From IMG/VR virus record IMGVR_UViG_3300029286_000009, positions 1 through 64,000 of that record: a stretch of DNA of 64,000 bases; one strand, 5' to 3'. Position numbers and translations under genes: made by a program. Under the pieces are notes generated by a model. The model ran no database searches. It was not told where the DNA came from and saw only the letters and a program-made list of their open reading frames with translations. Of this stretch, positions 39,908 through 56,719 are shown piece after piece (position 1 is the stretch's first letter; every line of letters starts with the position of its first letter).

Positions 39908-39909
39908 GA

Positions 39910-41025: not shown

Positions 41026-41108
41026 CTTTCTGACAGAATCAAGAACATCGCTTATTCAGAGTGTGCATAAATATCTTGACGTATCACATGAAGAGGAGGA
41101 ACTCTTAC

Positions 41109-44674: not shown

Positions 44675-45370
44675 ATGTCTAATTTTTTAAACTATCCAGA
44701 TAAGGATAAACCTATATTATTTTTGCACATACCTAGGACCGGCGGAACCTCATTTAGGTGGATGATGGCGGCACAATACGGCAATGAAAAGATGGGACTT
44801 ATACGTTATGACTATCTTATAGAAGCAGAAGTAATAAGTAGGCAAGAAGATTTTAAGGTTATTACCGGTCATCTTTATATAGATGACGAAGTTGTCCAAA
44901 ACCTCAATGGTACTTACAATAGTATCACTATATTACGCCACCCCCTGTATAGGGCATTGTCTTTTTATCATTATGCTACCAACTGGAAAGGAAATAATGA
45001 ACATGAAGCCATCAAAAGTTACTCTTTAGAAGAGTTTCTAATACACCCCCAATTTAGTAACATGTTGTGCAACCATATTGGCGGTAATAATTCTAATAGC
45101 GTTTATGTAGACGCGTGTAGTAATCTTTCTAGATTAACACTTTTTGGGTTTTATGAACGGTATGCAGAAATGATCGCGATTGCACAGCGGAGGTTTGACT
45201 GGGGTGGTGTGGTCATACGACGAGAAGAACACATAGATGGGGTGTCTACCCCTGAACAACTCTCTAAAGGGTTACTAGACAAGTGGGCGGAATTAAATAA
45301 AATGGATATAGATTTTTATGGATATGCCGTGACTCTCTATGAAGAACGGCGATTGAAGTGGCTGGAATAG
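44675..45370 (+). CDS. Sulfotransferase family 2 protein
   Basis: 5'-PSB motif FLHIPRTGGTS, 3'-PB motif TILRHPLYRALSFY, C-terminal N..DI.FY. Confidence 0.85.
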   Translation: MSNFLNYPDKDKPILFLHIPRTGGTSFRWMMAAQYGNEKMGLIRYDYLIEAEVISRQEDFKVITGHLYIDDEVVQNLNGTYNSITILRHPLYRALSFYHYATNWKGNNEHEAIKSYSLEEFLIHPQFSNMLCNHIGGNNSNSVYVDACSNLSRLTLFGFYERYAEMIAIAQRRFDWGGVVIRREEHIDGVSTPEQLSKGLLDKWAELNKMDIDFYGYAVTLYEERRLKWLE

Positions 45371-45383
45371 AATGGAGGAATAA

Positions 45384-46409
45384 ATGAATGTAATTGTTAC
45401 AGGAGGAGCAGGATTCGTTGGTAGCACGTTAGTAGGTAAACTATTAGATTGGATTGACTATAATAAGTATGGTATAGAGGAGTGTTTCCCAATTACAGAT
45501 GGGGTTGTGACTCACCTAGATTTACGAGATTACAGAGTAGTGGATAAACTTGTAGTGGTAGACTCGTTAGTCTTTAATCAAAATAGTTTAGGCCAATACA
45601 TGGCTGATGACAGATTTGAGTTCATTCATGGGGATGTGACAGACTTTAGTTTGATGAAACCCTTGTATGAGGAAGCAGATGTTATTATTCCTCTTTCTGC
45701 GATAGTGGGCTTTCCGGCGTGTGCAAAACACCCCGAGTTAGCGTGGAAGATAAATTATAAATCCGTAGTGGAGATGTTAAATTACGTTGGCAACAACAAA
45801 CTTATCGTTTTTCCTTGCACGAACTCTGGCTATGGTGTTTATCCAGATGGTAGATACGTGACAGAAGAAGACCCACTCAATCCCATATCAGTGTATGGCA
45901 AATCAAAGGTTGCTGCAGAAAAGGAGGTGTTACAGAATTTAGGGGTTTCGTTAAGATTAGCTACAGTTATGGGCTGGAGCTATTTTATGCGGGTGGGGCT
46001 CCTGGTAAATACGTTTTGTTGGCAAGCGGCACGACACAGAAATATTGTGCTTTATCAGAAGCAGAACAAAAGAAATTATATCCACGTGGAAGATGCGTGC
46101 CAGGCATTTTTGCTAGCTATAGAAAAGTATGACCAAATGAAGGGACAGGCTTATAACGTGGGGTTATCAACAGCCAATATAAATAAGGAGCAACTTGCTC
46201 AGAAGATTGCTAAGTATACCGAATTACATATTTTAGAAGCACCACTAATGGAAGATCCCGACCGGCGTGACTACCTTGTTTCTAATGCAAAGATAGAGGC
46301 ACTGGGTTTTAAACCTACGTGGACGTTAGACGCAACAATTAAACAACTATTGAAATTTTACGGCAGCATTTCTGAGCATTCGGCAAATGTTTATTTTGGA
46401 ACAACATAA
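45384..46409 (+). CDS. NAD-dependent SDR; GDP-D-glycero-D-manno-heptose 4-dehydrogenase-like (C. jejuni Cj1427/WcaG type)
   Basis: TGGAGFVG, IIPL.A.VG.P.C...P.LA..INY, P.TNSGYG, PIS.YG..K, RLATV, RNYIHV.D, Y..MKGQAYN.GLS.AN, EDPD.RDYLVSN.K. These match my recollection of Cj1427. Confidence 0.8.
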   Translation: MNVIVTGGAGFVGSTLVGKLLDWIDYNKYGIEECFPITDGVVTHLDLRDYRVVDKLVVVDSLVFNQNSLGQYMADDRFEFIHGDVTDFSLMKPLYEEADVIIPLSAIVGFPACAKHPELAWKINYKSVVEMLNYVGNNKLIVFPCTNSGYGVYPDGRYVTEEDPLNPISVYGKSKVAAEKEVLQNLGVSLRLATVMGWSYFMRVGLLVNTFCWQAARHRNIVLYQKQNKRNYIHVEDACQAFLLAIEKYDQMKGQAYNVGLSTANINKEQLAQKIAKYTELHILEAPLMEDPDRRDYLVSNAKIEALGFKPTWTLDATIKQLLKFYGSISEHSANVYFGTT

Positions 46410-46420
46410 GGAGATCTAAA

Positions 46421-46669
46421 ATGCAAGTTCCTTGCGATTTCAAAGAAAATAGGTGGATTAACTACCGTGGTTTAGTTAATTTACTCGACCTTGACAATAT
46501 AATTTGTTGCTACGGGGATCGGCTGCGTACAGTTAGCACTGATGCTTGTTTAACCTGCGAAAATTTACAATGGTCTTCCACGTCTTTCACTGATTACCTG
46601 CCCACTGCATCATCAGAGGGTTGCAGTGGTGGTTGCCATAGTTGCGGGGAGGATACATGCGACAGGTAG
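46421..46669 (+). CDS. Small Cys-rich protein
   Basis: 82 aa with GGAG RBS; CLTC and GCSGGCHSCGEDTC. Confidence 0.55.
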   Translation: MQVPCDFKENRWINYRGLVNLLDLDNIICCYGDRLRTVSTDACLTCENLQWSSTSFTDYLPTASSEGCSGGCHSCGEDTCDR

Positions 46670-46902
46670 ATCAGAATGTTAGCATTAGAATCATAGAAAA
46701 TACAAAGCTTACTTGTCTAACTTGTTTAGGCGGGGTGCTATTAGAGAATGAGTTGATTGGTCAGGTAGTAATTTGTCACCAGAACACAGAGGATGTGACA
46801 AAAAATATAAATGCATTTTGTTTACAGGGTATGTGGCTTGTAGAAGGGAAAGCCCGTGAGTTTAAGGAGGCGTTCAATACGCTTTACAAGGAGGAGAAGT
46901 AA
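46642..46902 (+). CDS. Hypothetical protein
   Basis: ORF coupled to the next gene by TAATG; has a CLTC motif like the upstream ORF. Confidence 0.5.
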   Translation: MRGGYMRQVDQNVSIRIIENTKLTCLTCLGGVLLENELIGQVVICHQNTEDVTKNINAFCLQGMWLVEGKAREFKEAFNTLYKEEK

Positions 46903-47903
46903 TGCAGTTAGGTGAGAAAAGAGGTATAGGCTATTTCCCCAGGATATTGATATTAGGCGACACCGGCTTCCTTGGAAGCCATCTACTCCCTGCACTACGG
47001 GAGCACTATAAGAATGCGGATATAGTATGCTCCCAGGGTACCAAATTTTTTGATTTGACACAACAAAATCACACAAAGACACTGTTTGCATCTATCGTAA
47101 ATAATCATGGTCCAATACATATTGTAATAAATTTGGCGGCATTAAGTGGTGGCATGTTTTCCAATATGGAGAAGCAAGCTACTTATTGGTATGTGAATAA
47201 TACTATTATTACTAATGTCATAGACCAGTGTGCTCTGCATAAGGTGCAGAAGTTAATCACACCAATTGGTGGGTGTAGTTATCCAAATGTAGCTTCTGGC
47301 GGGATTTTTAGGGAGCAAGACATTTGGTCGGGGTTTCCTAACAAGAACTCCTTTGGTTATTCTATGGCTAAGAAGCAGGCTATCGTGGCGGGCATGGCTT
47401 ACGAGGAGCAATTCGGGCTCAAATCTCATGTGCTCATTCCTACTAATCCGATTGGTCCGTGGGATAATTGTACGGATGAAGATGCACACGTGCCTATGGC
47501 TTTGATTAAACGATTTGTAGAGGCTAAGAATGAGGGATATTCTTCAGTTACTGTGCTAGGAAATGGAAAACCTGAACGAGATTTTCTGTACATCGGAGAC
47601 ATAGTTAAAGTGTTTCCAGCATTTATAAGCTATGGCGAGGGTGTTGGCCCAACTAATATTTCTAGTGGTGAGGCTACTACTATTGCTGAGCTAGCAGAAA
47701 CTATTGCACATGTAGTTGGGTTTACTGGAAAGATTCTCTATGATGCTAGTAAGCCTAATGGTCAGCAGAGGAAGATTTTGGACAACACAAGGCTGAGGTC
47801 ATTCTTGCAGGAGTGTGATATTGCGTGGGAACCTACACCACTAGAAGAATCAATAGGACTCACGGTGGATTGGTATGAGCAAAGAGTCGCGAAAAAGAAA
47901 TAA
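46902..47903 (+). CDS. fcl: GDP-L-fucose-synthase-like 4-keto-sugar epimerase/reductase
   Basis: G.TGFLG, LAA..GG...N, GCSYP, GY..AK, PTN..GP.DN, HV..ALI..F, G.G...RDFLY..D, D.SKP.GQ.RK. Confidence 0.82.
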   Translation: MQLGEKRGIGYFPRILILGDTGFLGSHLLPALREHYKNADIVCSQGTKFFDLTQQNHTKTLFASIVNNHGPIHIVINLAALSGGMFSNMEKQATYWYVNNTIITNVIDQCALHKVQKLITPIGGCSYPNVASGGIFREQDIWSGFPNKNSFGYSMAKKQAIVAGMAYEEQFGLKSHVLIPTNPIGPWDNCTDEDAHVPMALIKRFVEAKNEGYSSVTVLGNGKPERDFLYIGDIVKVFPAFISYGEGVGPTNISSGEATTIAELAETIAHVVGFTGKILYDASKPNGQQRKILDNTRLRSFLQECDIAWEPTPLEESIGLTVDWYEQRVAKKK

Positions 47904-50265
47904 GGTAACAACACCAGAGTTACCTAACTTTAAAGAAGCTTTCGCAGATAGTGCACAAAAACAGTTTGATGCATTTGTAAAGAGCGGGGAGTGTCTGGTT
48001 TTTCCAGTTACTCCCTGCCCTGTAGTTAGTATAGTGATTGTAACTTACAAACGCACAGCATTGGAATTTTTATGTTTACTTTCCATATTACGTTGGGCTT
48101 CTGGTGTTTGTTATGAGGTTATACTTTCCAACAATGGCAATACAGAAGATAACAAATATTTGATGGAGCATCTTAAGAACATTACGGTTCTAAGCCACGA
48201 AGAGAACTTGGGATTTGTGGAGGGAGTGAATAAGGGGGCAGCGGTGGCCAGAGGAGACTACCTTCTTTTACTTAATGATGATGCTCTGTTGTCATATCAA
48301 ACTCTTGAGAGTCTCCTAGAAGTTCTCCAAGGACAGCAGCAAGTTGGAGTCGTTGGGGCACAAATTCGGACGTTAGATAATCATATACAGGATGCGGGTG
48401 GAATTCTCTGGAACAATGGGGTGGCAGCTGAATACAGTAAAGGTAGGAATCCTGATATAGGTGATGTGAATTACCAAAGAGAAGTTGATTATGTATCGGG
48501 TGCATGTTTGATGACACGTACCAAGCTCTTCAAGGGCATGGGTGGGTTTGATGAAGTTTTTTCCCCTGGTTATTGCGAGGAGTCTGACTACTGTTGCAGG
48601 TTACGTAAAGCAGGATTTAAGATTATCTATCAGCCTAAAGCACACCTAATTCATTATGAATATGGGAGTAGTGATCCGGAATACGTGAATCGTTTAGTAG
48701 AGGTGCATACAGCTATGTTGGTGAATAAACACAAGGATTTGTTTGCAACACAAAGTTTTCATCCCACGACACCAGTGGCTTACGCCCGAACCACTACACG
48801 CTGCTGCGGGCGGGTATTAATAGTAGAAGACTTTGTTCCGCATTCTTACTATCGCTCCGAGATAGCTACTTTCATCAATAATTTACGAAGAAGAGGTTTC
48901 TTTGTTACTTATTACCCAAGATTTTCTGGGGTAGATGATTGGCAATCCGTATATGAACTTCTTGATGAAGATGTAGAAGTAATGTTGTTTGAATCTATTG
49001 ATGAGTTGCCACGGATGTTATCCGAACGCCCTCGCTTTTATGATTATTTTATATCATCCTCTTTCTCTTTTGATAGTTTACGAAGTAAGCATGCCGATCC
49101 CCTAATAGGGAAGAGGGTTATTGAGGGGAGACCATTAGATAACGAGCTCCTTAGCTATATGACTAATAAGAGGTTGTTGTGGATAGATTGGCACATACCT
49201 GAGCCGGATACCAATGCTGGTGATTATGCAGTTTACTCATATTGTAATGCTTTTAAGGATTTAGGATATAATATTTGTTATGTACCGAATGACCCGGCTT
49301 TTAGGAAACAGGACTCTTCTTACATAGAAAGATTTAGACAAGAGGAGTGGGAGATTTGGGATTTCCCATGGTCTTTTGAACAGACCATTGCGGATTTGGG
49401 GCATACGATAGACTTAGTTGTGGTTGCTCGTCCTCTAGCTATTAACTATATCGATAAAATAAGAGCATGGTCTCACGCACCGATCATTTATTATTGCCAT
49501 GACCTACACTATTTGCGGGAACAGCGTCGTGCACAACAAAATTTTGGTAAGATAGACATAGAGCAAATTGAGCAGTTACGGTTGCTAGAATATTCTATTA
49601 TTCAGAAGTGCGACTTAACTGTTACGGTAAGCCAGTTTGAAAAAGAAGAGCTATCGCGAGAATTACCACAGGCAGAAGTATCTGTATGGCCTTGGTTTGC
49701 TCCTCCTAAGGTTACAATGCGAAGCTATCCAACTTCACCTAAGTATATAGATTTTATCGGGGGCATGCAGCACACTCCCAACCAAGATGCTATTAAATGG
49801 TTTGTCTACGATATATTACCTAGGATAAGGAAAGTGTTACCTGATGTGCAGTTTAATATCATTGGGAGTGGGGTGCCAGAAGACATTCAGAAGCTACATC
49901 ATAAGGACAATATAAATGTACTTGGACATGTGAAAGAGCCCTCTCCTTTTTTCTTAGCTGATACAGTTCTAGTTGCCCCCATGCGCTTTGGGGCGGGACT
50001 TAAAGGTAAGATTGCCATGGCTATGCAACATGGGTTACCAGTAATTACAACTACGATTGGTGCAGAGGGCATGGGTCTGACAAACTTTAAGAACGTTAGG
50101 GTTGTTGACGACCCCCAACAGTTTGCTGAGGCTGTAATAGAGGTTATGCAGGAGCCGATGATTTGGGAAGAGTTATCTCGTAACTCTCTAGAGTATGCAA
50201 GGAAACATTGGTCTTTAGAATCGGTGCAAAATCAATTGGGGGTTGACATAAAATGTATAAGTTAA
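47875..50265 (+). CDS. Bifunctional glycosyltransferase (GT2 plus GT4-like domains)
   Basis: VSIVIVTY...ENLGF...N.GA...LLLLNDD...VSGACL...GGFDE.F.PGY.EESD; C-terminal FIGG..H.PN.DA..WF...APMRFGAGLKGKI..AM..GLPV.TT.IGAEG. Confidence 0.88.
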   Translation: MSKESRKRNKVTTPELPNFKEAFADSAQKQFDAFVKSGECLVFPVTPCPVVSIVIVTYKRTALEFLCLLSILRWASGVCYEVILSNNGNTEDNKYLMEHLKNITVLSHEENLGFVEGVNKGAAVARGDYLLLLNDDALLSYQTLESLLEVLQGQQQVGVVGAQIRTLDNHIQDAGGILWNNGVAAEYSKGRNPDIGDVNYQREVDYVSGACLMTRTKLFKGMGGFDEVFSPGYCEESDYCCRLRKAGFKIIYQPKAHLIHYEYGSSDPEYVNRLVEVHTAMLVNKHKDLFATQSFHPTTPVAYARTTTRCCGRVLIVEDFVPHSYYRSEIATFINNLRRRGFFVTYYPRFSGVDDWQSVYELLDEDVEVMLFESIDELPRMLSERPRFYDYFISSSFSFDSLRSKHADPLIGKRVIEGRPLDNELLSYMTNKRLLWIDWHIPEPDTNAGDYAVYSYCNAFKDLGYNICYVPNDPAFRKQDSSYIERFRQEEWEIWDFPWSFEQTIADLGHTIDLVVVARPLAINYIDKIRAWSHAPIIYYCHDLHYLREQRRAQQNFGKIDIEQIEQLRLLEYSIIQKCDLTVTVSQFEKEELSRELPQAEVSVWPWFAPPKVTMRSYPTSPKYIDFIGGMQHTPNQDAIKWFVYDILPRIRKVLPDVQFNIIGSGVPEDIQKLHHKDNINVLGHVKEPSPFFLADTVLVAPMRFGAGLKGKIAMAMQHGLPVITTTIGAEGMGLTNFKNVRVVDDPQQFAEAVIEVMQEPMIWEELSRNSLEYARKHWSLESVQNQLGVDIKCIS

Positions 50266-50837
50266 ACTGGAAAACAATTTTGAGGGCCTTGTCACCTGGG
50301 CAGCGTTCCGAAGACGTACCTTTTGATGAGCATGAGGCTTTGGAAGAGTGGGCAAAGCAGGCAGCAGATACATTTGGGGAAGGATCATTGGCACTGGAGA
50401 TAGGTGCTTATAAGGGGGCATCCACCGCGATTTTGGCACAGTTCTTTAAAGTTATTACTATAGATTTGTGGTATCCTTTAGAGAATTATGCGTATGAAAC
50501 AATGGGCGACAATTTCTCCGATTTTATGGATACCTACAAGAAGTTTGATCTCAGAGGCAGGGTGTTTCCATTGTTGGGTACCAGTGAAACTTTAACAGGT
50601 ATACTTCCTAAATTGTTTACTAAATTTTGTTTTGTTGACGGCGACCACAGTTACGAGGGCGCGAAGTCTGACTTGTATTTTTGTGATTATCATCTGGCAG
50701 ACCGGGGTTATTTAGTAGTGCATGATTATCCACGTGCGGGGACTGTTGAGCGTGCAGTAGACGAATTTGTGCAAGATAAGTCGTATGATAAGTGGGGCTG
50801 TGTGTCGGATGGTATAGTAGCTCTCAGAAAAAAATAA
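50253..50837 (+). CDS. Class I SAM methyltransferase (Methyltransf_24-like)
   Basis: LEIGAYKGAST, FVDGDHSYE....D, GYLVVHDY, V.RAVDEF. Confidence 0.85.
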   Translation: MYKLNWKTILRALSPGQRSEDVPFDEHEALEEWAKQAADTFGEGSLALEIGAYKGASTAILAQFFKVITIDLWYPLENYAYETMGDNFSDFMDTYKKFDLRGRVFPLLGTSETLTGILPKLFTKFCFVDGDHSYEGAKSDLYFCDYHLADRGYLVVHDYPRAGTVERAVDEFVQDKSYDKWGCVSDGIVALRKK

Positions 50838-50854
50838 TAACCTGGCGAACATTT

Positions 50855-50866
50855 GGGTACTATATT
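50855..50866 (+). promoter_or_regulatory. Putative phage promoter GGGTAC-TATATT
   Basis: Lies in the gap after the 50837 stop and before the GGAGGG RBS/ATG 50883. Upstream CGAACATTT resembles CGAGCATTT at the 21.27-kb copy. Confidence 0.55.
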
Positions 50867-50882
50867 TACAGTAGGAGGGTAT

Positions 50883-51077
50883 ATGCAACGCGAAAGTAAT
50901 GCACAAGTTAAACAGATGCAGGCGATGTTGGGGAAGTGTCTCAATGAAATATCTGAACTCAAACGCCGAGTTGGCACATTGGAGGACAAGGTATCTAAAA
51001 TGCCCAATACTGCATCAATCACTGCCAATCCAGTTGAAGGTATTTATGGTTCCATGGTGATAGGAGAACAAGGGTGA
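50883..51077 (+). CDS. Small coiled-coil protein
   Basis: GGAGGG RBS; heptads LNEISELKRRVGTLEDKV (track start 50853). Confidence 0.55.
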   Translation: MQRESNAQVKQMQAMLGKCLNEISELKRRVGTLEDKVSKMPNTASITANPVEGIYGSMVIGEQG

Positions 51078-51919
51078 TTGCTATTGTAGGTTATAAAGGC
51101 TTCATAGGCTCAACTTTATATCGTTATGCTCAAGAGCACATCACAGAAGAGGTGATAGGTGTTGATGTAGACAATTACAAACAGTGGGCAAAGGACTATC
51201 TTGGCTGGAGCACGCTAGTATGGGCGGCGGGGATGTCTTCAAAACCAAAGTGTAATGAGAACAAGGGCGAATGTTGGAAAGCGAACGTAGATGATTTAAG
51301 AGATGCTCTTAATGATTTTAATCCTCACAAAGTTGTGTATATCAGTTCCTATGATGTGTATGCTCCAGACTTGGAGCACCCCTCAGAGGAAGATACCGAC
51401 CCTTTTTCTGACGAGTATGTATCCAAACTTTCTTGGTATGGACGAACTAAGTTGGCGGGTGAACAGGTTGTAAAATTATGGGCAGAAGATTACCGTAAGA
51501 AATATCTCATAACTAGATGCAATGGGTTTACAGGAGCCGGTCTTAAAAAGAATGTAGTGTATGATTTGAAACAGCTTCCCCCCAAATTGTATGTAGCTTG
51601 GGATTCTAGATTTCAGTATCTACACACAGATCGATTTGCTCAAATTCTTCTAAATCTGTCTTCTACCTATAGTAATGAAGTGTTTAACGTGACAGCTATA
51701 GATTGTGTTACCCCCCTAGAAATACGTGATATGCTAGATGTGTTTGTTCCGGTGTGTACACCCCCTATCACTGAACTACCGAGGATAAACGCTGTCATGG
51801 ACACCATGAAGATGGGAATAGCACTAACCAAAATGGGTATGCAATTACCGTTATGCAAGGAGGCAATAAAAAATTGGAACCAATCTATTTTTCTAGAGGA
51901 TTTAGGTACCGTTGTGTAA
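51074..51919 (+). CDS. NAD-dependent epimerase/dehydratase/reductase (extended SDR)
   Basis: G.KGFIGS, YISS.DVY, YGRTK (YxxxK). Confidence 0.82.
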   Translation: MIAIVGYKGFIGSTLYRYAQEHITEEVIGVDVDNYKQWAKDYLGWSTLVWAAGMSSKPKCNENKGECWKANVDDLRDALNDFNPHKVVYISSYDVYAPDLEHPSEEDTDPFSDEYVSKLSWYGRTKLAGEQVVKLWAEDYRKKYLITRCNGFTGAGLKKNVVYDLKQLPPKLYVAWDSRFQYLHTDRFAQILLNLSSTYSNEVFNVTAIDCVTPLEIRDMLDVFVPVCTPPITELPRINAVMDTMKMGIALTKMGMQLPLCKEAIKNWNQSIFLEDLGTVV

Positions 51920-52182
51920 ATTGCGGAGTTGTGTGGGGTAATTCAGATTATCCGGAGGGGGATTATAGTGACGGATTGTGTAAGATTTGTTTTAGAGATA
52001 AAATCAGACCGCTTATTCATCGACGACAATTAAAGGAGGGTTTTACCCCGTGTTATGGTGACGGGCGCCAAGATTGTGACGAAGATAAATGTGAGTTTTA
52101 TATGAATTGTGTTGAAAAAAATATAAATGAATGGAAGCGATTGATAATTAGTGAGGATAACGGAAAAGAAATAGATGGATGA
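51853..52182 (+). CDS. Cys-rich metal-binding protein
   Basis: CVNC...GLCKIC plus RQLKEGFTPCYG...CDEDKC.F...C. Confidence 0.55.
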   Translation: MQGGNKKLEPIYFSRGFRYRCVNCGVVWGNSDYPEGDYSDGLCKICFRDKIRPLIHRRQLKEGFTPCYGDGRQDCDEDKCEFYMNCVEKNINEWKRLIISEDNGKEIDG

Positions 52183-52895
52183 TAATCGTCCCAGTGACCG
52201 GGGATAAATTGAGGAATGGAAAGGAAAAGGTATTCATGTTGGTTCTAAAATCAAAGAAGAGTAAGCCTGATTATAAATGGGAAACCTACTATGCAACGGC
52301 AGGTTTTATACGCATTGCCGGGTTGGATGAAGTTGGTATGTCTTCTATAGCAGGACCGTGCGTTGCGTCTGCTGTTATTCTTAGCCCAGATATGACTATA
52401 AAAGGGTTAGACGACTCCAAACGCCTCAGTCCTGAGCAACGAGAATACTTGTATGATATAATATTAAAAAACTGTGTGGACTATGGGGTTGGGATAGCGT
52501 CTGTTCAGACTATAGAGCAAAAAAATATTTATTGGGCCAGCCGGGATGCAATGATATCTGCAATTGAACAATTAGCCTCACCCCCGGATTTTTTGCTTAT
52601 TGATGGTGGGCAACCGCTAAAGTATAATATAACTCAAACGAGCATAATTAAAGGTGACACCAAGTGTGCCTCTATTGCAGCGGCTAGCATCGTGGCTAAA
52701 GTGACTAGAGACCGATTGATGTGCAGGCTACATGAACTGTATCCTAACTATGGTTGGTGCCAGAACAAAGGTTATCCGACTGATTTTCACAGAGAAGCTA
52801 TCACTAAATATGGTATTACCGAACACCACCGTAAAGGGTTTGCTGGTGTAATTAAGAAGGGAAAGTGGAAGACGCACCAAGGGTTAGGGGAGTAA
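52179..52895 (+). CDS. rnhB: Ribonuclease HII
   Basis: IAGLDEVG...AGP, LDDSK.L, LLIDG, IIKGD....SIAAASIVAKVTRD, NKGYPT..H, HR. Start may be the ATG at 52236. Confidence 0.92.
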   Translation: MIIVPVTGDKLRNGKEKVFMLVLKSKKSKPDYKWETYYATAGFIRIAGLDEVGMSSIAGPCVASAVILSPDMTIKGLDDSKRLSPEQREYLYDIILKNCVDYGVGIASVQTIEQKNIYWASRDAMISAIEQLASPPDFLLIDGGQPLKYNITQTSIIKGDTKCASIAAASIVAKVTRDRLMCRLHELYPNYGWCQNKGYPTDFHREAITKYGITEHHRKGFAGVIKKGKWKTHQGLGE

Positions 52896-52946
52896 CTATG
52901 GTAGAAGAAATACCACAAAACATTTTGGACCAAGGAGGTAGAAAGA

Positions 52947-53156
52947 ATGAACAACCGGCAGTACGAGCAAGAAAAGAAGAATAGAAAAGAGATGATTCTG
53001 GCTCTAAGCCTTATTTTTGGTGTTTGGTGGGGTATTCCTATTTTGCTTACTTTAATTGGTTATTTCTTTTATCCACCTCTTTTTGAGGTAGGTCCTATTT
53101 TATGGGGAGTTCTTACTGTGATTGGTGTGGGTATTGCGGCAAGCGGGGGTAGATAA
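52947..53156 (+). CDS. Small membrane protein (two TM helices)
   Basis: GGAGG RBS; two hydrophobic segments. Confidence 0.6.
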   Translation: MNNRQYEQEKKNRKEMILALSLIFGVWWGIPILLTLIGYFFYPPLFEVGPILWGVLTVIGVGIAASGGR

Positions 53157-53590
53157 TGGGAGAGTGGGTGGAGGCGTATATTGAGAGTAAAGATGCAGAG
53201 TGGGATCAAGGATTTCGCAGTGGAGATACGTCACCTTATTTTTCAAGCACAGACGATTACGAACGTCGAGACTGGCAAGATGATGATCTGCCAGATGATT
53301 TTATAACTCCGCGTAAAAATTCTTGCTGGGGTTGTAAAAACAATTGGTTCTTGTCAGGATATTGTAGACGAGATTTTTCGATAGCTTTGTTTGATTGGAG
53401 CTATACATGCAAGCATTTCGAAAAGGACGGTAGCTATGAATGGAGGATAGTTTGGAGTATGTTATACATGGCTTGGAGACACCACTTTAGTGGTAATGAT
53501 CTTGGGTTTAAGAGATGGATGAAAACTGAAGAGGGTAAGAAATATTATGCGGCTGGAAAGACTTTCCTAAAAGAAAAAGGGATACTGTAA
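53156..53590 (+). CDS. Hypothetical protein
   Basis: TAATG-coupled ORF; CWGC...C...C.HF motif. Confidence 0.55.
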   Translation: MGEWVEAYIESKDAEWDQGFRSGDTSPYFSSTDDYERRDWQDDDLPDDFITPRKNSCWGCKNNWFLSGYCRRDFSIALFDWSYTCKHFEKDGSYEWRIVWSMLYMAWRHHFSGNDLGFKRWMKTEEGKKYYAAGKTFLKEKGIL

Positions 53591-53943
53591 TGGAAGCGTA
53601 TATTAAGGGTAAAGACCGAAGAAGGACGGCAATATTGGAACTCAGCAAAAGAGTACAGAGAATCAAAAGGAGTAACAAAATGAAAATAATTGGAAAGACT
53701 AATTTAGGTAATATTACGGCAGGTACAGAGACCACTTACAAATTTATGGTTGTCAGTGACGATGGTAAACCCGTAGGTTCCCAAGTCAAGATTATACCCG
53801 TGGTAACAAAAGGAAAACTCAGTATCAATCCGCTCAAGATTGAAACAGACGAGCACAGTATAGGTGAATGTAAATTGTATCTTCCTATCGATGCCAGTGG
53901 TGTTTGTAGATTTGAGATGATTCCTGTTGGCATGGGGCTCTGA
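53590..53943 (+). CDS. Hypothetical protein (Ig-like beta sandwich)
   Basis: AG....KFMVV.DDGKPV...TDE..IG.C pattern resembles Big-1/Ig-like domains. Confidence 0.45.
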   Translation: MEAYIKGKDRRRTAILELSKRVQRIKRSNKMKIIGKTNLGNITAGTETTYKFMVVSDDGKPVGSQVKIIPVVTKGKLSINPLKIETDEHSIGECKLYLPIDASGVCRFEMIPVGMGL

Positions 53944-54037
53944 TAGGCGACGATAGACTTATGGGGGATAGAACAAGATATAGCTGTTGGAAAGGTATAG
54001 ATTATGAGGTTCCAGAGAGTTGGTGGGGAGGATGTTA

Positions 54038-54781
54038 ATGGATGCAATAATCATTGCAGGAGGAACTGGGAGTCGTGTTAGAAGCATCACAAAAGATGAA
54101 TATCCAAAAATACTAATTCCTGTTAATGGCAAAGCTTTTATTGAGTATCTTTTGGAAACGTTGTATTCTATGGGTGTAAGACACATAACTTTTGCGGCGG
54201 GGTTTAAATGGGATGTGCTCGCAGGCTATATGAAACGAAGGGATGACATTAACACCAGATACTTAGATTGGACACTTTGTTACGAGTGGGAGCCCAAAGA
54301 CACTGGAGGAGCTATCTTAAATGTGCTTTCATCCAGAAGTGCTCGTCCACATAGTGATCCATTTTTGGTGTTGAACGGAGACACTCTAATATTTCCTGAG
54401 AAGGGCGTTGATTGTTACGAAGAGTTATATTATACAGAACCACAATGGGGCAAACCCGCGTGTGCTATGTTTACATGCCATACCCACCACAATGGGCAGT
54501 ATGATACGCTACTGATTGATTACGAAGATTGGGTAACAAAGATAGAACCAGGTAGAAGAGAGACACTTACTAGTTCTTTTGTAAGTTGCGGTTGGTATTT
54601 TCTCCGCCAGGAATTTTTTAAGAACTACCCCAAAGTAGAAAAACTATCCTTTGAGAAAGATATGCTTCCTGCTTATTTGGAAGAGGCACAAGTAATTAAG
54701 CCTATAATTATAGACGAAAAACAATTCATAGAAATTGGGACACCAGAAGCACTTGTTGCTGCCCAGAAAAGATTATCTTAG
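54038..54781 (+). CDS. hddC: Heptose-1-phosphate guanylyltransferase-like nucleotidyltransferase
   Basis: AIIIAGG.GSR......PK.L.PVNGK.F.EY, E....TGGAI, VLNGDT, SFEKD, FIEIGTPE; adjacent to hddA and gmhA (track start 54020). Confidence 0.78.
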   Translation: MDAIIIAGGTGSRVRSITKDEYPKILIPVNGKAFIEYLLETLYSMGVRHITFAAGFKWDVLAGYMKRRDDINTRYLDWTLCYEWEPKDTGGAILNVLSSRSARPHSDPFLVLNGDTLIFPEKGVDCYEELYYTEPQWGKPACAMFTCHTHHNGQYDTLLIDYEDWVTKIEPGRRETLTSSFVSCGWYFLRQEFFKNYPKVEKLSFEKDMLPAYLEEAQVIKPIIIDEKQFIEIGTPEALVAAQKRLS

Positions 54782-54811
54782 AAATTTAAAGTATATTGAT
54801 AGGAGTCCGAT

Positions 54812-55804
54812 ATGATTATAGTTTCTTCCCCTACACGTGTGAGTCTTGGCTCCTCAGATCATAGTCCTTTTTCTGAGCGGTTTAATGGGGTTGCATTATC
54901 TATCTGCATAAACAAACGTGTTTATGTTATTCTGCGGAACCGTAGTGGTCTGGAAGAAACTAAATTTAGAGTTTCCTATTCTAAGACGGAGTTGTGCAAC
55001 ACTATTGATGAGATACAGTTGAGTATAGCACGGGCGGCATTAAGTAAAACGGATTTCACGGATCCCCTGGAAATCATTTACGCATCGGACGTACCTGCCC
55101 AAACTGGCTTAGGCACTAGTAGTGCTTTTGCCTTAGCTTTGCTTAAAGGGTTACTCATTTATAAAAATGTAGGTATATCTAACGAGATATTGTCTGAGTG
55201 GGCTTACACGTTAGAGCGAATAGATTTAAATGAAAAGGGCGGGTGGCAAGACCAATATAGTTTAGCTTTAGGGGGGATCAACTACCTGACGGGTAAACCA
55301 TTTAATGTGAAACGAGAGCCAGTTATGCTTAGTCCTGATAAGGCTAAGCTACTTGAAGATCACTTGTTGTTAATATATACTGGTAAACAAGGTAGTTCGC
55401 ATAAAATGATTGCAGACCAATTAGCGAGGTTAGAAGTAAATAAGACGCTTGAGGAGACACTTCAAATAAAGAAAATAGTTGAAGAGATGCACAAATTGCT
55501 TATTAGTCCTGACTTCCACCCCACCCATTTAGTCTATCCTATGCGAGAAACGTGGGACTTGAAGAAACGGTTATCCAGTGGAATGACAAACGAAGCGGTG
55601 GACGACTTAGAGCGAAGAGTGATGGATGTAAATTCCAAGGCGGCAGTGCGATTAGTCGGTGGTGGTGGGGGGCGAGGAACGTTGTTAGTATTGACCGCCC
55701 CGGAATGTAAGGAAGAGATATGCAGAGCGGTTAAGCCGCTACAGTGTGTAGATGTTCGTATAGACTGGGAAGGTGTAAGGGCAAGGAGGATTTTTAGTGA
55801 TTAA
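54812..55804 (+). CDS. hddA: D-glycero-alpha-D-manno-heptose-7-phosphate kinase (GHMP family)
   Basis: P.RVSLG..D, SYSKTE, DVPA.TGLGTSSAF, ER......GG.QDQY..A.GG.N, YTG, W.LK. Confidence 0.82.
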   Translation: MIIVSSPTRVSLGSSDHSPFSERFNGVALSICINKRVYVILRNRSGLEETKFRVSYSKTELCNTIDEIQLSIARAALSKTDFTDPLEIIYASDVPAQTGLGTSSAFALALLKGLLIYKNVGISNEILSEWAYTLERIDLNEKGGWQDQYSLALGGINYLTGKPFNVKREPVMLSPDKAKLLEDHLLLIYTGKQGSSHKMIADQLARLEVNKTLEETLQIKKIVEEMHKLLISPDFHPTHLVYPMRETWDLKKRLSSGMTNEAVDDLERRVMDVNSKAAVRLVGGGGGRGTLLVLTAPECKEEICRAVKPLQCVDVRIDWEGVRARRIFSD

Positions 55805-56366
55805 GGAATCGTTACGTTATACCATAGATGCACTGAGGTTAGTTATTCAAGACGAAGTTCTACTTAGAAAGATTAAATTACTTACAGACAAAATCGTGTC
55901 TACTTATAAAAATGGTGGGACAGTTTTTACTTGTGGTGTAGGGGGGAGCTTATCAGATCATCTCAACGCTGAACTCATGAACCGCTTCTCTTTACACAGA
56001 GAATTCCCTATGAATGCCATAGAGTTATCAGGCAACACCGCTTTGATAACAGCTATTAGTAATGACTACGGGTTTGAATATATATTTTCTAAACAGATAG
56101 GAGCTCTAGGACGACCAGGAGATTTGCTCATTGGTATCTCCACATCGGGTAGAACGGAAGCAGTTTTGCGGGCGGTAGTTAAAGGGAATATACTGGGTAT
56201 GAATACAGTTTTGGTTACTGGGGCAGCTGGACCTCTGGTTGAATCTACCATTCATCTGCAGCTACCTGCTTGGGAAACTGGGCGTATTCAAGAACTGTGG
56301 CTCAGTATCTTACATGCAATTTGTAGGGAGATCGATCAGTATAACTTGAAGGAAAATGTTTTGTGA
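55797..56366 (+). CDS. gmhA: Sedoheptulose-7-phosphate isomerase
   Basis: CG.GGS..DH..AEL..RF, TAISNDYGFE.IFS.Q..ALG..GD.LIGISTSG, T.RIQE...ILH.IC. Confidence 0.88.
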   Translation: MIKESLRYTIDALRLVIQDEVLLRKIKLLTDKIVSTYKNGGTVFTCGVGGSLSDHLNAELMNRFSLHREFPMNAIELSGNTALITAISNDYGFEYIFSKQIGALGRPGDLLIGISTSGRTEAVLRAVVKGNILGMNTVLVTGAAGPLVESTIHLQLPAWETGRIQELWLSILHAICREIDQYNLKENVL

Positions 56367-56719
56367 AAGTGTACAGTTATCAAAATAATGTGGTAAGAAC
56401 AGCACTCGGGGATGTAGAGTTTATCATCAAAGACATAAAAGGATATGATGAAAAATTATTGTGTGTGGGTATATGGTTGGTATATCCTGATTGCAAGTGC
56501 AGAAAAGATGCAGTAGTTTATGTAAACCGCGAGTGGTTCACACCAGAATTTATCTTTAGGCGTATTGGTTACGAAACTGCGGTCTTGCTAGCTCAGGGGT
56601 TTATAATAGACTGTGAAACGTGTCCTAAGTGCAAAAAGCTGAACAGAATAGCTAGAGACACAAAGTTACTGGGTATAAACCTAATTCGGTATTCAGATAT
56701 AAATCATTGGAGAAATTAA
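56363..56719 (+). CDS. Hypothetical protein
   Basis: 118-aa ORF overlapping both neighbours; Cys motifs. Confidence 0.5.
   Translation: MKVYSYQNNVVRTALGDVEFIIKDIKGYDEKLLCVGIWLVYPDCKCRKDAVVYVNREWFTPEFIFRRIGYETAVLLAQGFIIDCETCPKCKKLNRIARDTKLLGINLIRYSDINHWRN

What the first reader, a model, noticed from the sequence alone, without database searches (positions are those of the whole stretch)
45384..56366. Campylobacter-capsule-like modified GDP-heptose pathway in a phage
Seen: hddC-hddA-gmhA (54038-56366), an SDR matching the Cj1427 GDP-manno-heptose C4-dehydrogenase motifs (45384-46409) and an Fcl-like enzyme (46902-47903). The Fcl-like protein keeps Cys (GCSYP) and His (AHV) at the GDP-fucose-synthase epimerase acid/base positions. 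No Gmd 4,6-dehydratase, RmlC-type epimerase or GmhB phosphatase is visible. Known: C. jejuni uses GmhA, HddA, GmhB and HddC, then Cj1427/Cj1430/Cj1428, to make epimerised capsule heptoses. Inference: the phage converts host sedoheptulose-7-P into a rare epimerised, probably O-methylated GDP-heptose, with the Fcl-like protein doing both epimerisation and reduction and GmhB supplied by the host or elsewhere in the genome.
Basis: partly seen in the sequence, partly recalled or inferred. Interest (0 to 1): 0.8.

Follow-up and report, generated by a model that had tools for sequence, protein, structure and literature searches.

The report
Jumbo-phage modified GDP-heptose sugar island
An uncultured freshwater jumbo phage carries its own genes to make GDP-heptose and reshape it with three related oxidoreductases inside a large sugar-transferase island. 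It is a new variant of a bacterial pathway, and what the sugar is attached to is still unknown.

Summary
The window is the first 64 kb of a 260-320 kb lake phage. It encodes intact but divergent HddC-, HddA- and GmhA-like enzymes, a close relative of the C. jejuni GDP-heptose C4-dehydrogenase Cj1427 (PDB 6vo6, E 1e-76), and an Fcl-like protein. That protein keeps Cys109, His179, Tyr136 and Lys140 of E. coli GDP-fucose synthase. No Gmd, cupin epimerase or GmhB is present.

The interpretation needs correcting in three ways.
- **Lost Ser107.** The Fcl-like protein has Gly at the catalytic-triad Ser107 position. All 42 of its closest homologues share this, and they form one clade.
- **A third SDR.** Canonical Fcl-like neighbours of bacterial Cj1427 homologues never have this partner (0 of 31). 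The likely scheme is oxidise (SDR1), epimerise (SDR2), reduce (SDR3). This is inferred, not shown.
- **Bacterial origin.** The same SDR1-SDR2-SDR3-HddA(-GT2-MT-HddC) operon occurs in bacteria, so the module is not specific to Campylobacter.

The pathway sits in a roughly 28 kb island with about 11 glycosyltransferase domains, five methyltransferases, an acetyltransferase and a sulfotransferase, and no membrane export genes. The acceptor (virion protein, host envelope or DNA) is unresolved. Verdict: a new variant of a known kind, of moderate interest.

The parts
55797..56366 (+). GmhA-like sedoheptulose-7-phosphate isomerase (189 aa)
   Evidence: NCBIfam PRK13936 3.1e-40, 138 bits against a cut-off of 276. 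PDB 1tk9 1.2e-30. Catalytic His/Glu/Gln/His and the STSG loop are conserved against E. coli GmhA.
54812..55804 (+). HddA-like GHMP kinase (D-glycero-D-manno-heptose-7-P 1-kinase), 330 aa
   Evidence: NCBIfam HddA 3.7e-23. PDB 3k85 2.3e-26, 4usk and 4n3o, with the GLGTSS motif kept. A homologue lies within 8 kb of 62 of 80 bacterial Cj1427 homologues.
54038..54781 (+). HddC-like sugar-1-phosphate guanylyltransferase (247 aa; alternative TTG start at 54020)
   Evidence: Pfam NTP_transferase. NCBIfam HddC 1.6e-23. PDB Yersinia HddC 6jq8 2.8e-20, with the GGxGxR motif kept.
45384..46409 (+). SDR1: Cj1427-family NDP-heptose C4-dehydrogenase (341 aa), with a roughly 30-aa insertion after the first beta-alpha unit
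   Evidence: PDB 6vo6 9.7e-77. TNSGYG and YGxxK are invariant in the family alignment. The phage-type proteins form one clade.
46902..47903 (+). SDR2: Fcl-derived enzyme of the 'GGC' clade (333 aa). Cys125, His196, Tyr153 and Lys157 are kept; Gly stands at the Ser107 position
51074..51919 (+). SDR3: short extended SDR (281 aa) with GxxGxxG, SS and YGxxK; candidate C4 reductase
   Evidence: Pfam Epimerase 2.9e-16. Alignment. Model pLDDT 89.7. Foldseek hits to GalE-type epimerases, Rmd and RmlD. It follows GGC-type SDR2 in L005, L053, L075, L089 and L090.
56707..57627 (+). GT2 glycosyltransferase linked to hddA; candidate transferase for the modified heptose
   Evidence: Pfam Glycos_transf_2 4.2e-9. 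A GT2 directly follows the kinase in the phage relatives and in bacterial operon L089.
57642..58664 (+). GT-A-like protein (340 aa, no Pfam hit)
   Evidence: ESM Atlas: features score 0.97 and structure TM about 0.6 to GT2 clusters. Conserved after the GT2 in relatives. This is a lead, not proof.
47875..50265 (+). Two-domain GT2 + GT4 glycosyltransferase (796 aa)
   Evidence: Pfam Glycos_transf_2 1.2e-15 and Glyco_trans_1_4 4.5e-22.
50253..50837 (+). Class I SAM methyltransferase (Methyltransf_24)
   Evidence: Pfam 3.7e-12.
44675..45370 (+). Sulfotransferase
   Evidence: Pfam Sulfotransfer_2 8.9e-8. PHROG galactose-3-O-sulfotransferase 1e-4. Relative L005 has an APS kinase beside its sulfotransferase.
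44038..44673 (+). TylF-type sugar O-methyltransferase
   Evidence: Pfam TylF 1.7e-18.
43113..44045 (+). Possible glycosyltransferase (weak GT17 match)
   Evidence: Pfam Glyco_transf_17 5.1e-5, below the cut-off.
42571..43104 (+). Hexapeptide-repeat acyltransferase
   Evidence: Pfam Hexapep 1e-9.
41797..42570 (+). SAM methyltransferase (Methyltransf_24)
   Evidence: Pfam 4.1e-11.
39206..40779 (+). SAM methyltransferase (39206-39907) followed by a GT-A-like protein (39910-40779)
   Evidence: Pfam Methyltransf_24 1.1e-10. ESM Atlas GT-A-like lead.
33921..36873 (+). GT4 (33921-35060), GT2 (35057-35932) and a GT47/Glyco_trans_1_2-like transferase (35884-36873)
   Evidence: Pfam. PHROG 2170 glycosyltransferase. 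Syntenic in relatives.
30573..31943 (+). GT4 glycosyltransferase; left edge of the island
   Evidence: PHROG 2170 2.1e-46. Pfam Glycos_transf_1.

Best explanation
The window belongs to an uncultured freshwater jumbo phage of 260-320 kb. It carries a conserved glycan-biosynthesis island of about 28 kb (30.6-58.7 kb), and the finding is the nucleotide-sugar part of that island.

Proposed route:
1. GmhA turns host sedoheptulose-7-P into D-glycero-D-manno-heptose-7-P.
2. The HddA-like GHMP kinase makes the 1,7-bisphosphate.
3. A GmhB phosphatase removes the 7-phosphate. None is encoded here, so it is presumably the host's LPS-core enzyme or lies elsewhere in the genome.
4. [quoted passage not shown] A three-SDR module then remodels the sugar. 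SDR1 (Cj1427 family) oxidises C4. SDR2 is derived from Fcl. It keeps the Cys/His acid-base dyad but has lost triad Ser107, and it epimerises C3 and/or C5 of the 4-keto sugar. SDR3 has an intact Ser-Tyr-Lys triad and reduces C4. The product would be an L-configured heptose (L-gluco or L-galacto type).
6. The product, together with host nucleotide sugars, is used by soluble glycosyltransferases. The hddA-linked GT2 at 56707 is the first candidate. Methyl-, acetyl- and sulfotransferases tailor the glycan, which is built in the cytoplasm on a soluble acceptor.

What is shown: gene identities, conserved catalytic residues, the clade-wide Ser-to-Gly change, the SDR2-SDR3 pairing, synteny in related phages, and the same operon in bacteria.

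What is inferred: the substrate, the division of labour among the three SDRs, the stereochemistry, the source of GmhB, and the acceptor. My leaning for the acceptor is virion proteins, as in giant viruses, but this is weakly supported.
For: - Gene identities and residues.
- SDR1 is specifically related to Cj1427: E 1e-76 against 3.5e-16 for the next PDB hit.
- In 80 bacterial genomes a Cj1427 homologue lies within 8 kb of an HddA-like kinase in 62, an HddC-like gene in 34 and a GmhA in 13. This ties the family to heptose activation.
- SDR2: all 42 closest homologues read G-G/A-C...Y...K...H, and the more distant ones read S/T-x-C. The Gly-107 proteins form one clade, SH-aLRT 97.
- SDR3-type genes follow GGC-type SDR2 in the window, L005, L053, L075, L089 and L090 (6 of 6). 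They follow none of 31 canonical S/T-x-C Fcl-like neighbours.
- SDR3 keeps GxxGxxG, SS and YGxxK. Its model resembles C4-acting SDRs, including Rmd and RmlD.
- Bacterial operons L075 and L089 read SDR1-SDR2-SDR3-HddA(-GT2-MT-HddC).
- The island is syntenic in two related jumbo-phage contigs.
- No multi-pass membrane protein, flippase, polymerase or priming transferase occurs among the island ORFs.
- Literature: in Fcl, Ser107/Tyr136/Lys140 carry out the reduction and Cys109/His179 the epimerisations. The Campylobacter reductases lack the dyad and have no epimerase activity (PMC7949155). The Cj1427 chemistry is described in PMC10680097.
Against: - No enzyme was assayed.
- All five pathway proteins fall well below NCBIfam's curated cut-offs.
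- The GGC clade keeps the glycine-rich cofactor motif, Tyr and Lys. It also has a co-varying Asn133-to-Ser change that could relocate the lost hydroxyl, so SDR2 may still reduce.
- Foldseek cannot tell whether SDR3 is a 4-reductase or a 4-epimerase.
- L064 has an AGC-type SDR2 without an SDR3.
- In the window SDR3 is 3.2 kb from SDR2, not adjacent.
- Related phages lack gmhA next to hddA.
- GmhB was not found, and about 75% of the genome could not be searched.
- Many bacterial Cj1427 homologues sit beside aminotransferases, radical-SAM and E1-type enzymes, so the family serves several pathways.
- Nothing identifies the acceptor.
Confidence: 0.55

Rival explanations
1. The Cj1427-like enzyme oxidises C4 and the Fcl-like protein alone does both the C3/C5 epimerisation and the C4 reduction. 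SDR3 does something else, for example a C4 or C6 epimerisation of the product, or work on a different sugar.
For: SDR2 keeps Cys, His, Tyr, Lys and the cofactor glycines. The clade-wide Asn133-to-Ser change might replace Ser107. The two-enzyme arrangement of SDR1 plus a full-triad Fcl-like protein, without SDR3, is common in bacteria: 31 loci. One AGC-type SDR2 (L064) has no SDR3.
Against: Triad Ser107 is Gly in the phage protein and its 42 closest homologues and in L053 and L075 (Ala in L064). In Fcl this Ser is part of the reducing triad (PMC7949155). The clade is paired with an extra triad-complete SDR in 6 of 6 loci, and the canonical Fcl-like proteins never are.
Confidence: 0.25
2. The module does not act on a heptose. 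The kinase and nucleotidyltransferase activate another sugar, for example mannose or fucose salvage, and the SDRs convert GDP-mannose or a GDP-hexose without dehydration. GmhA would be an unrelated auxiliary gene.
For: The HddC-like protein scores as well against mannose-1-P guanylyltransferase as against HddC, and the kinase also hits fucokinase at 6.4e-19. Related phages have no gmhA in the island. All scores are below the equivalog cut-offs.
Against: The best PDB hits for all three activation enzymes are heptose enzymes, by 9-14 orders of magnitude. gmhA overlaps the end of hddA in the same operon. Cj1427, the only characterised relative of SDR1, acts on GDP-heptose (PMC10680097). HddA-like kinases accompany 62 of 80 bacterial homologues.
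Confidence: 0.1
3. The island hypermodifies the phage DNA. The modified heptose and other sugars are attached to a hydroxymethylated base, as in the phage clusters that put heptose on 5hmC.
For: Phage clusters that install mono- and di-heptose on 5hmC are known (bioRxiv 10.1101/2023.12.21.572611). The island lies among replication genes: clamp, UvsX, DnaB, primase, RNase HII, PolA. GT4/GT-B enzymes are the class used by DNA glycosyltransferases. A Mom-like ORF sits between the two GT4 genes. All transferases are soluble.
Against: No dCMP/dUMP hydroxymethylase or TET/JBP dioxygenase was seen in the window or in 16 kb downstream. The phage has ThyX, a C5-methylase next to an R.HinP1I-like nuclease and three Dam-like methylases, which suggests ordinary C, T and A with methylation. 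About 11 GT domains plus O-methyl-, acetyl- and sulfotransferases far exceed the mono- to trisaccharides known on DNA. The Mom-like ORF is absent from a related phage.
Confidence: 0.1
4. The island remodels a host envelope glycan (LPS, capsule, S-layer or EPS) during infection, using the host's lipid carrier and export machinery. The purpose could be to block superinfection, as is proposed for LPS-type genes of cyanophages.
For: HddA-like kinases and Fcl-like genes are annotated in T4-like cyanophages and Caulobacter phage Cr30. The heptose module is shared with bacterial surface-glycan operons. Cytoplasmic-face transferases of such pathways are also soluble. Sulfated glycans fit some freshwater hosts (own knowledge).
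Against: No priming phosphoglycosyltransferase, flippase, polymerase or ABC exporter is in the island. The island is conserved in order inside the replication module of divergent relatives. That looks more like a core phage function than a moron.
Confidence: 0.25

Closest known systems
[quoted passage not shown]
   Same: It has the same activation enzymes (best PDB hits). It has the same C4-dehydrogenase family (6vo6, E 1e-76). The logic is the same: oxidise C4, epimerise next to the keto group, reduce C4 (PMC10680097).
   Different: There is no cupin (RmlC-type) epimerase and no Cj1428-type reductase. Instead there is an Fcl-derived protein with the Cys/His dyad plus a separate short SDR. There is no gmhB and no capsule export genes. 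The proteins are only about 25-48% identical to the Campylobacter ones.
GDP-L-fucose synthase (Fcl / GMER / GFS), E. coli and human
   Same: SDR2 is full-length homologous (NCBIfam 1.2e-51; PDB 3.6e-41). It keeps Cys109, His179, Tyr136, Lys140 and the cofactor glycines.
   Different: Triad Ser107 is Gly and Asn133 is Ser in the whole clade. The score is 176 bits against a cut-off of 500. There is no Gmd partner. The upstream enzyme is a non-dehydrating C4-dehydrogenase, so the likely substrate is a 6-hydroxy heptose rather than a 6-deoxyhexose. The protein is paired with an extra SDR.
Uncharacterised bacterial operons SDR1-SDR2(GGC)-SDR3-HddA(-GT2-MT-HddC), e.g. L075 (Vicinamibacterales MAG) and L089
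   Same: They have the same three SDR families in the same order, with the same kinase, nucleotidyltransferase and GT2.
   Different: The identities are 28-44%. The bacterial loci are compact operons, whereas the phage version is spread over 11 kb. The phage version is interleaved with more transferases, tailoring enzymes and RNase HII, and it has its own gmhA.
Phage gene clusters that glycosylate 5hmC in DNA, including heptose (bioRxiv 10.1101/2023.12.21.572611)
   Same: Both are phage-encoded supplies of an activated heptose plus soluble GT-B transferases, set among DNA-metabolism genes.
   Different: Those clusters use a HAD/APH kinase-phosphatase and a cytidylyltransferase, with one to three transferases. 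They sit beside a C5-methylase plus TET-type oxidase or a hydroxymethylase. None of these hallmarks was found here.
Virus-encoded glycosylation machineries of giant viruses (chloroviruses, mimiviruses; Chem Rev review PMC9614988) and glycosylated mycobacteriophage virions
   Same: Many soluble, sometimes multi-domain, glycosyltransferases are combined with sugar methyltransferases and the virus's own nucleotide-sugar enzymes. They act in the cytoplasm without lipid-carrier export genes.
   Different: Those viruses infect eukaryotes, or, for mycobacteriophages, have only one or two transferases. No heptose pathway is known there to my knowledge. No acceptor protein is identified here.

Membership tests
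GmhA (sedoheptulose-7-P isomerase) | SIS fold, with the catalytic Glu65/His180 pair and the Ser-Thr-Ser phosphate loop (E. coli numbering; residues from own knowledge of the GmhA structural work) | tested here: met
   Alignment with E. coli K-12 GmhA: the H61, E65, STSG, Q172 and H180 equivalents are invariant. PDB 1tk9 1.2e-30.
GmhA (sedoheptulose-7-P isomerase) | Score above NCBIfam's curated equivalog cut-off | tested here: not met
   138 bits against 276 (PRK13936) and 127.8 against 209.45 (TIGR00441). It is a divergent member.
HddA (D-glycero-D-manno-heptose-7-P kinase, GHMP) | GHMP kinase fold and ATP-binding motif, with heptose kinases as the closest characterised relatives | tested here: met
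   Pfam GHMP_kinases_N. PDB 3k85, 4usk and 4n3o at 2e-26 to 2e-17, against fucokinase at 9e-12; the GLGTSS motif is kept.
HddA (D-glycero-D-manno-heptose-7-P kinase, GHMP) | NCBIfam equivalog cut-off; phosphorylation of heptose-7-P at O1 (alpha) | tested here: not met
   82.5 bits against 600. The activity itself cannot be tested with these tools.
HddC (heptose-1-P guanylyltransferase) | NTP_transferase fold with GGxGxR, and HddC as the closest relative | tested here: met
   PDB 6jq8 and 5xhw at 3e-20, against 1e-9 for GMPPB.
HddC (heptose-1-P guanylyltransferase) | NCBIfam equivalog cut-off; GTP and heptose specificity | tested here: not met
   83.5 bits against 300, and the score is tied with mannose-1-P guanylyltransferase. 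Specificity cannot be tested here.
Cj1427-type GDP-heptose C4-dehydrogenase | Extended SDR with GxxGxxG and a Thr/Ser-Tyr-Lys triad, and specific sequence kinship to Cj1427 | tested here: met
   6vo6 at E 9.7e-77, about 48% identity over 272 aa. TNSGYG and YGxxK are invariant.
Cj1427-type GDP-heptose C4-dehydrogenase | [quoted passage not shown] | not testable with these tools
   Only context is available: gmhA, hddA and hddC lie in the same island, and HddA-like neighbours accompany 62 of 80 bacterial homologues.
GDP-L-fucose synthase (Fcl/GMER) | Cys109/His179 acid-base dyad for C3/C5 epimerisation (PMC7949155) | tested here: met
   Cys125 and His196 align with E. coli Cys109 and His179.
GDP-L-fucose synthase (Fcl/GMER) | Ser107-Tyr136-Lys140 reducing triad (PMC7949155) | tested here: not met
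   Tyr and Lys are present. Ser107 is Gly in the phage protein, its 42 closest homologues, L053 and L075, and Ala in L064.
GDP-L-fucose synthase (Fcl/GMER) | Works after a Gmd 4,6-dehydratase; NCBIfam equivalog cut-off | tested here: not met
   No Gmd is in the window. The score is 176 bits against 500.
C. jejuni heptose-modification set (Cj1427 + cupin epimerase Cj1430 + reductase Cj1428) | RmlC-type cupin C3/C5 epimerase and a dyad-less Cj1428/MlghC-type reductase | tested here: not met
   No cupin or dTDP_sugar_isom family turned up in any scanned ORF. SDR2 matches Cj1428 (7m13) only at 1.5e-13, against 3.6e-41 for Fcl.
GmhB (heptose-1,7-bisphosphate 7-phosphatase, HAD) | HAD fold with the DxDx(T/V) motif | tested here: not met
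   There is no HAD Pfam hit. The motif scan hit only a helicase and a transferase. tblastn with E. coli GmhB gave a best E of 1.8 in the window and nothing listed in L087 or L088. The rest of the genome was not searched.
Phage DNA-glycosylation gene clusters (5hmC/5hmU based) | Neighbouring C5-methylase plus TET/5mYOX, or a ThyA-like hydroxymethylase, supplying the acceptor base | tested here: inconclusive
   None was found in 80 kb. A C5-methylase lies 8 kb past the window but is paired with an R.HinP1I-like nuclease. About 75% of the genome was not examined.

The most novel reading that the evidence does not exclude
A lineage of freshwater jumbo phages makes a rare L-configured, tailored heptose from host sedoheptulose-7-P. 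It uses a previously unrecognised three-SDR route in which an Fcl descendant has become a dedicated 3,5-epimerase. The phage then uses the sugar in a giant-virus-style cytoplasmic glycosylation system of about 11 transferase domains, plus methyl, acetyl and sulfate tailoring, to decorate its own virion proteins.
Probability: 0.25. Interest if true: 0.75.

Novelty: new variant of a known kind. Interest (0 to 1): 0.55.

Why it matters
If confirmed, it would add three things.

1. **A third enzymatic solution for heptose remodelling.** The known ways of epimerising and reducing 4-keto sugars are the cupin-plus-reductase pair of Campylobacter and the one-enzyme Fcl solution. Here an Fcl-derived protein lacking the triad serine is paired with a small reductase-like SDR. 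This route is shared by diverse uncultured bacteria and a phage lineage. It could be useful for enzymatic synthesis of rare GDP-heptoses.

2. **An unusually self-sufficient phage glycan toolkit.** It runs from a central metabolite to tailored sugar to many transferases. It is conserved inside the replication module of a jumbo-phage clade. This suggests that glycosylation of a phage component may be a core function, as in giant viruses.

3. **A caution for annotation.** JGI labels this Ser-less clade 'GDP-L-fucose synthase', and it probably is not one.

Tried and rejected
- **Phage database searches.** Megablast of the 11 kb region against 50,697 phage records found nothing. tblastn with the clamp protein found nothing, and DnaB gave at most 27.5% identity. 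No cultured relative exists. tblastn of SDR1 against phages found only distant SDRs (31% or less), so no isolate phage has a Cj1427-type gene.
- **GmhB.** Pfam, a HAD motif regex and tblastn with E. coli GmhB were all negative. I tried to reach the rest of the genome. The DNA search returns only about 6 kb past a match and the look-up of encoding contigs only 10 kb.
- **Unannotated ORFs.** PHROGs and Pfam on the giant ORFs and the unknown island ORFs gave nothing.
- **SDR3.** The PDB sequence search gave no hit. The Foldseek search of its model gave generic C4-acting SDRs and could not separate reductase from epimerase.
- **SDR1 tree.** The phage clade is distinct, but the bacterial three-SDR operons are scattered, so no donor can be named.
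- **Further SDR3-family members.** Three were looked up for context. Two lie on contigs too short to judge, and one has an Fcl-like gene directly upstream.
- **Small ORFs 46421-46902.** I considered whether they are a split cupin epimerase. They have no family hit and are not conserved in L005, so I rejected this.
- **SDR4 (62734-63654).** I considered it as a hidden Gmd. It lacks the Tyr-x-x-x-Lys motif, so I rejected this.
- **Cj1427 papers.** The structural and kinetic papers (PMC7509852, PMC7500870) are not held. Residue-level comparison with its active site was therefore limited to the triad.

Full report
**What the window is.** The window equals bases 1-64000 of JGI contig Ga0247841_10000060 (259,732 bp; IMG/VR UViG 3300029286_000009). 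The same phage is assembled as a 320,389 bp ENA contig. The 4.9 kb tested (45384-50265) occurs in lake and freshwater metagenomes from several studies. The window encodes a sliding clamp, UvsX, DnaB, primase, DnaJ and RuvC. Just past the window lie PolA, NrdD/G, ThyX, an NAD-dependent ligase and several DNA methylases. There is no nucleotide match to any of 50,697 phage records. Replication proteins match cultured phages only distantly or not at all. It is an uncultured jumbo phage with 41% GC, and all of its genes are on the + strand.

**Checking the observation.** The three activation genes are real.
- The NTP-transferase at 54038-54781 is closest to HddC: PDB 6jq8 at 2.8e-20, against 1.3e-9 for GDP-mannose pyrophosphorylase.
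- The GHMP kinase at 54812-55804 is closest to heptose-7-P kinases: 3k85 at 2.3e-26, WcbL, and C. jejuni HddA.
- The SIS protein at 55797-56366 is a phosphoheptose isomerase: NCBIfam 3.1e-40, 1tk9 at 1.2e-30. The equivalents of E. coli GmhA His61, Glu65, the STSG loop, Gln172 and His180 are conserved.
- Nucleotide-binding and catalytic motifs are intact in all three. All score far below NCBIfam's equivalog cut-offs, so 'divergent' is a fair description.

The SDR at 45384-46409 matches the Cj1427 structure 6vo6 at 9.7e-77. The next PDB hit is 3.5e-16. My hand count of the printed alignment gives about 48% identity over 272 residues.

The protein at 46902-47903 is Fcl-like: NCBIfam 1.2e-51, and PDB Fcl/GFS entries at 3.6e-41 to 1.6e-33. 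It is much further from the Campylobacter C4-reductases, at 1e-13 to 1e-23. I took E. coli K-12 Fcl from the annotated genome and aligned it. Cys109, Tyr136, Lys140 and His179 are all conserved in the phage protein.

The claimed absences also hold. No Gmd, cupin epimerase or HAD phosphatase turned up in the Pfam scans, which covered most ORFs of 100 aa or more. A HAD motif scan gave nothing usable. tblastn with E. coli GmhB against the window plus 16 kb downstream gave a best E of 1.8.

1. In the phage protein the residue aligned with Fcl Ser107 is Gly ('GGCSYP' against 'SSCIYP'). In Fcl, Ser107, Tyr136 and Lys140 form the reducing triad, and Cys109 and His179 carry out both epimerisations (PMC7949155).
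2. This is not an oddity of one sequence. All 42 closest homologues (39% identity or more) read G-G/A-C...Y...K...H, and more distant ones read S/T-x-C.
3. On a maximum-likelihood tree the Gly-107 proteins form one clade, SH-aLRT 97. This clade is separate from canonical Fcl, including the E. coli enzyme.
4. The clade keeps the cofactor glycines. It shows one further clade-specific change, Asn133 to Ser, three residues before the catalytic Tyr.
5. There is a third SDR at 51074-51919 (281 aa) with invariant GxxGxxG, Ser-Ser and Tyr-Gly-x-x-Lys. It has no sequence hit in the PDB.
6. Its AlphaFold model is confident (pLDDT 89.7). It resembles C4-acting extended SDRs: GalE-type epimerases, GDP-4-keto-6-deoxymannose reductase Rmd, and RmlD.
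7. Its family is small: 285 representatives at E of 1e-30 or better among 1.84 billion.

**The SDR2-SDR3 pairing.** An SDR3-type gene follows a GGC-type SDR2 in every locus where I could read both. These are the window, the related phage L005, and bacterial loci L053, L075, L089 and L090. In the five loci other than the window the two genes are adjacent. A further SDR3 relative has an Fcl-like gene overlapping its start.

I also examined 36 Fcl-like genes that lie within 8 kb of bacterial Cj1427 homologues.

| Type at the Ser107-Cys109 position | Loci | SDR3 partner |
|---|---|---|
| S/T-x-C with Y, K/R, H | 31 | none |
| GGC | 2 | both |
| AGC (L064) | 1 | none |
| Cys/His dyad missing | 2 | none |

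These counts are not phylogenetically independent, but the pattern is clean.

It suggests two bacterial solutions downstream of a Cj1427-type oxidase, neither of which uses a cupin epimerase. The other is a three-enzyme version in which the Fcl descendant has lost the triad serine and a small SDR is added. The phage has the second version. The simplest reading is that SDR2 epimerises and SDR3 reduces. The retained cofactor motif and the Asn133-to-Ser change mean residual or relocated reductase chemistry in SDR2 cannot be excluded.

In the 80 best loci, the following lie within 8 kb.

| Neighbour type | Loci out of 80 |
|---|---|
| HddA-like kinase | 62 |
| HddC-like gene | 34 |
| GmhA | 13 |
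| GmhB-like gene | 7 |

Loci L075 and L089 read SDR1-SDR2-SDR3-HddA(-GT2-methyltransferase-HddC). Most of these operons borrow GmhA and GmhB from the LPS-core pathway. This makes host supply of GmhB to the phage plausible. It also explains why the related phages have the kinase but no gmhA beside it. The phage's own gmhA, which overlaps the end of hddA, is the most heptose-specific evidence.

Other frequent neighbours of bacterial Cj1427 homologues are DegT aminotransferases (51 loci), B12-radical-SAM enzymes and E1-type dehydrogenases. The family therefore feeds several 4-keto-sugar pathways, and substrate identity still needs an assay.

**The wider island.** The pathway genes are scattered through a block of about 28 kb (30573-58664).
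- Transferases: GT4, GT4, GT2, a GT47-like transferase, a weak GT17-like protein, a GT2+GT4 fusion and a GT2. Two further proteins look GT-A-like only by ESM Atlas.
- Tailoring enzymes: four Methyltransf_24 enzymes, one of which is TylF-type. A fifth methyltransferase count arises when the pair at 39206 is included. There is also a hexapeptide acyltransferase and a sulfotransferase.
- Gene order is conserved in two related jumbo-phage contigs of 210 and 256 kb. This includes the RNase HII between SDR3 and hddC. One relative adds an APS kinase beside its sulfotransferase.
- The GT2 that follows hddA is also linked to the kinase in the relatives and in bacterial operon L089. This makes it the first candidate for the heptosyltransferase.

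A hydropathy scan finds no multi-pass membrane protein in the island. Pfam finds no flippase, polymerase, ABC exporter or priming phosphoglycosyltransferase. Assembly is therefore cytoplasmic, on a soluble or host-provided acceptor.

**What is glycosylated?** This is unresolved.
- DNA is a serious candidate in principle, because phage clusters are known to put heptose on 5hmC (bioRxiv 10.1101/2023.12.21.572611). Those clusters sit next to a C5-methylase plus TET-type oxidase or a hydroxymethylase. They use one to three transferases and activate heptose with a HAD/APH enzyme and a cytidylyltransferase.
- Here I saw none of these in 80 kb. The phage has ThyX, a C5-methylase paired with an R.HinP1I-like nuclease, and three Dam-like methylases, which suggests ordinary bases. 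The Mom-like ORF between the two GT4 genes is missing from a relative.
- Host-envelope remodelling is possible, but it lacks any export or priming gene.
- Glycosylation of virion proteins, as in giant viruses (PMC9614988), fits three features. The transferases are soluble and multi-domain. O-methyltransferases are abundant. The position inside the core replication module is conserved. No acceptor is identified, so this is a leaning and not a finding.

**Comparison and novelty.** The system works like the C. jejuni heptose-modification pathway up to the 4-keto intermediate. It then departs from both known solutions, cupin plus reductase and single Fcl. It fails membership tests for bona fide Fcl: no Ser107, no Gmd partner, and a score below the cut-off. 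It also fails for the Campylobacter Cj1430/Cj1428 pair.

HddA-like and Fcl-like genes are already annotated in cyanophages and in Caulobacter phage Cr30. No isolate phage in the collection has a Cj1427-type gene. I found no paper describing a phage GDP-heptose modification module.

I rate it a new variant of a known kind, of moderate interest. The enzymology is a tidy and testable hypothesis that reaches well beyond this phage. The biological role of the island is the more exciting part, but also the less supported one.

**Limits.**
- Nothing was assayed.
- About three quarters of the genome could not be reached with the capped tools.
- The gene-neighbourhood counts rest on the 80 bacterial loci most similar to the phage protein.
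- The Cj1427 structure papers were not available for residue-level checks.

Noticed in passing
window 31945-33921 (+): A 658-aa ORF sits between the two GT4 genes. It matches PHROG 559/3339 ('HNH/homing endonuclease', 5.7e-127) and has a C-terminal Mom-like DNA-modification domain (Pfam Mom 1.2e-9). In a related phage the two GT4 genes are adjacent without it, so it looks like a mobile insertion.
   Followed up: partly
window 62734-63654 (+): A fourth SDR (306 aa) lies between a PD-(D/E)XK nuclease and DNA polymerase A. It keeps GxxGxxG but has no Tyr-x-x-x-Lys at the catalytic position (Ile/His instead). It is probably not a classical redox enzyme and not part of the heptose pathway.
   Followed up: partly
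window 2978-12574 and 12575-19051 (+): Two giant ORFs (3198 and 2158 aa, 17-19% Ser+Thr) have no Pfam or PHROG match at all. They are followed by a 666-aa ORF that is also unmatched. They could be virion or fibre proteins and possible glycan acceptors, but nothing supports this yet.
   Followed up: partly
L088 10001-20789 (ENA contig, about 6-16 kb past the window end): The phage carries an apparent restriction-modification pair: a C5 DNA methylase next to an R.HinP1I-like endonuclease. It also carries three Dam-like methylases and an N6/N4 methylase. Its ThyX appears split into a 262-aa ORF and a 66-aa Thy1 fragment.
   Followed up: no
window 37938-38753 and 41061-41570 (+): An ADP-ribosylglycohydrolase (4.2e-30) and a SocA/Panacea antitoxin-like protein (4.6e-18) are embedded in the sugar island. 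They are possible counter-defence genes.
   Followed up: no
L005 1-1016 and 9489-9998 (related 256 kb phage contig): The relative has a 667-aa SDR whose Epimerase/GDP_Man_Dehyd domain is interrupted by a LAGLIDADG segment, possibly an intein or homing-endonuclease insertion. It also has an APS kinase next to its sulfotransferase, which implies phage-encoded PAPS supply.
   Followed up: no
bacterial loci L006-L085: Bacterial Cj1427 homologues are often flanked by a DegT-type aminotransferase (51 of 80 loci), a B12-binding radical-SAM enzyme (37) and E1 dehydrogenase alpha/beta subunits. This hints at uncharacterised 4-amino or branched heptose pathways.
   Followed up: partly
window 52179-52895 (+): An RNase HII gene sits between SDR3 and hddC, at the same place in both related phages. 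The sugar genes and replication genes are thus interleaved in a conserved order.
   Followed up: partly
window 52947-53156 (+): A 69-aa ORF with two strongly hydrophobic segments is one of the few membrane-like products in the window and the only one with two strong segments. Its function is unknown.
   Followed up: no
window 24431-25000 (+): An ORF with P22 AR N-terminal and T5orf172/MUG113 (GIY-YIG-like) domains lies inside the replication module. It is probably a mobile nuclease or regulator.
   Followed up: no
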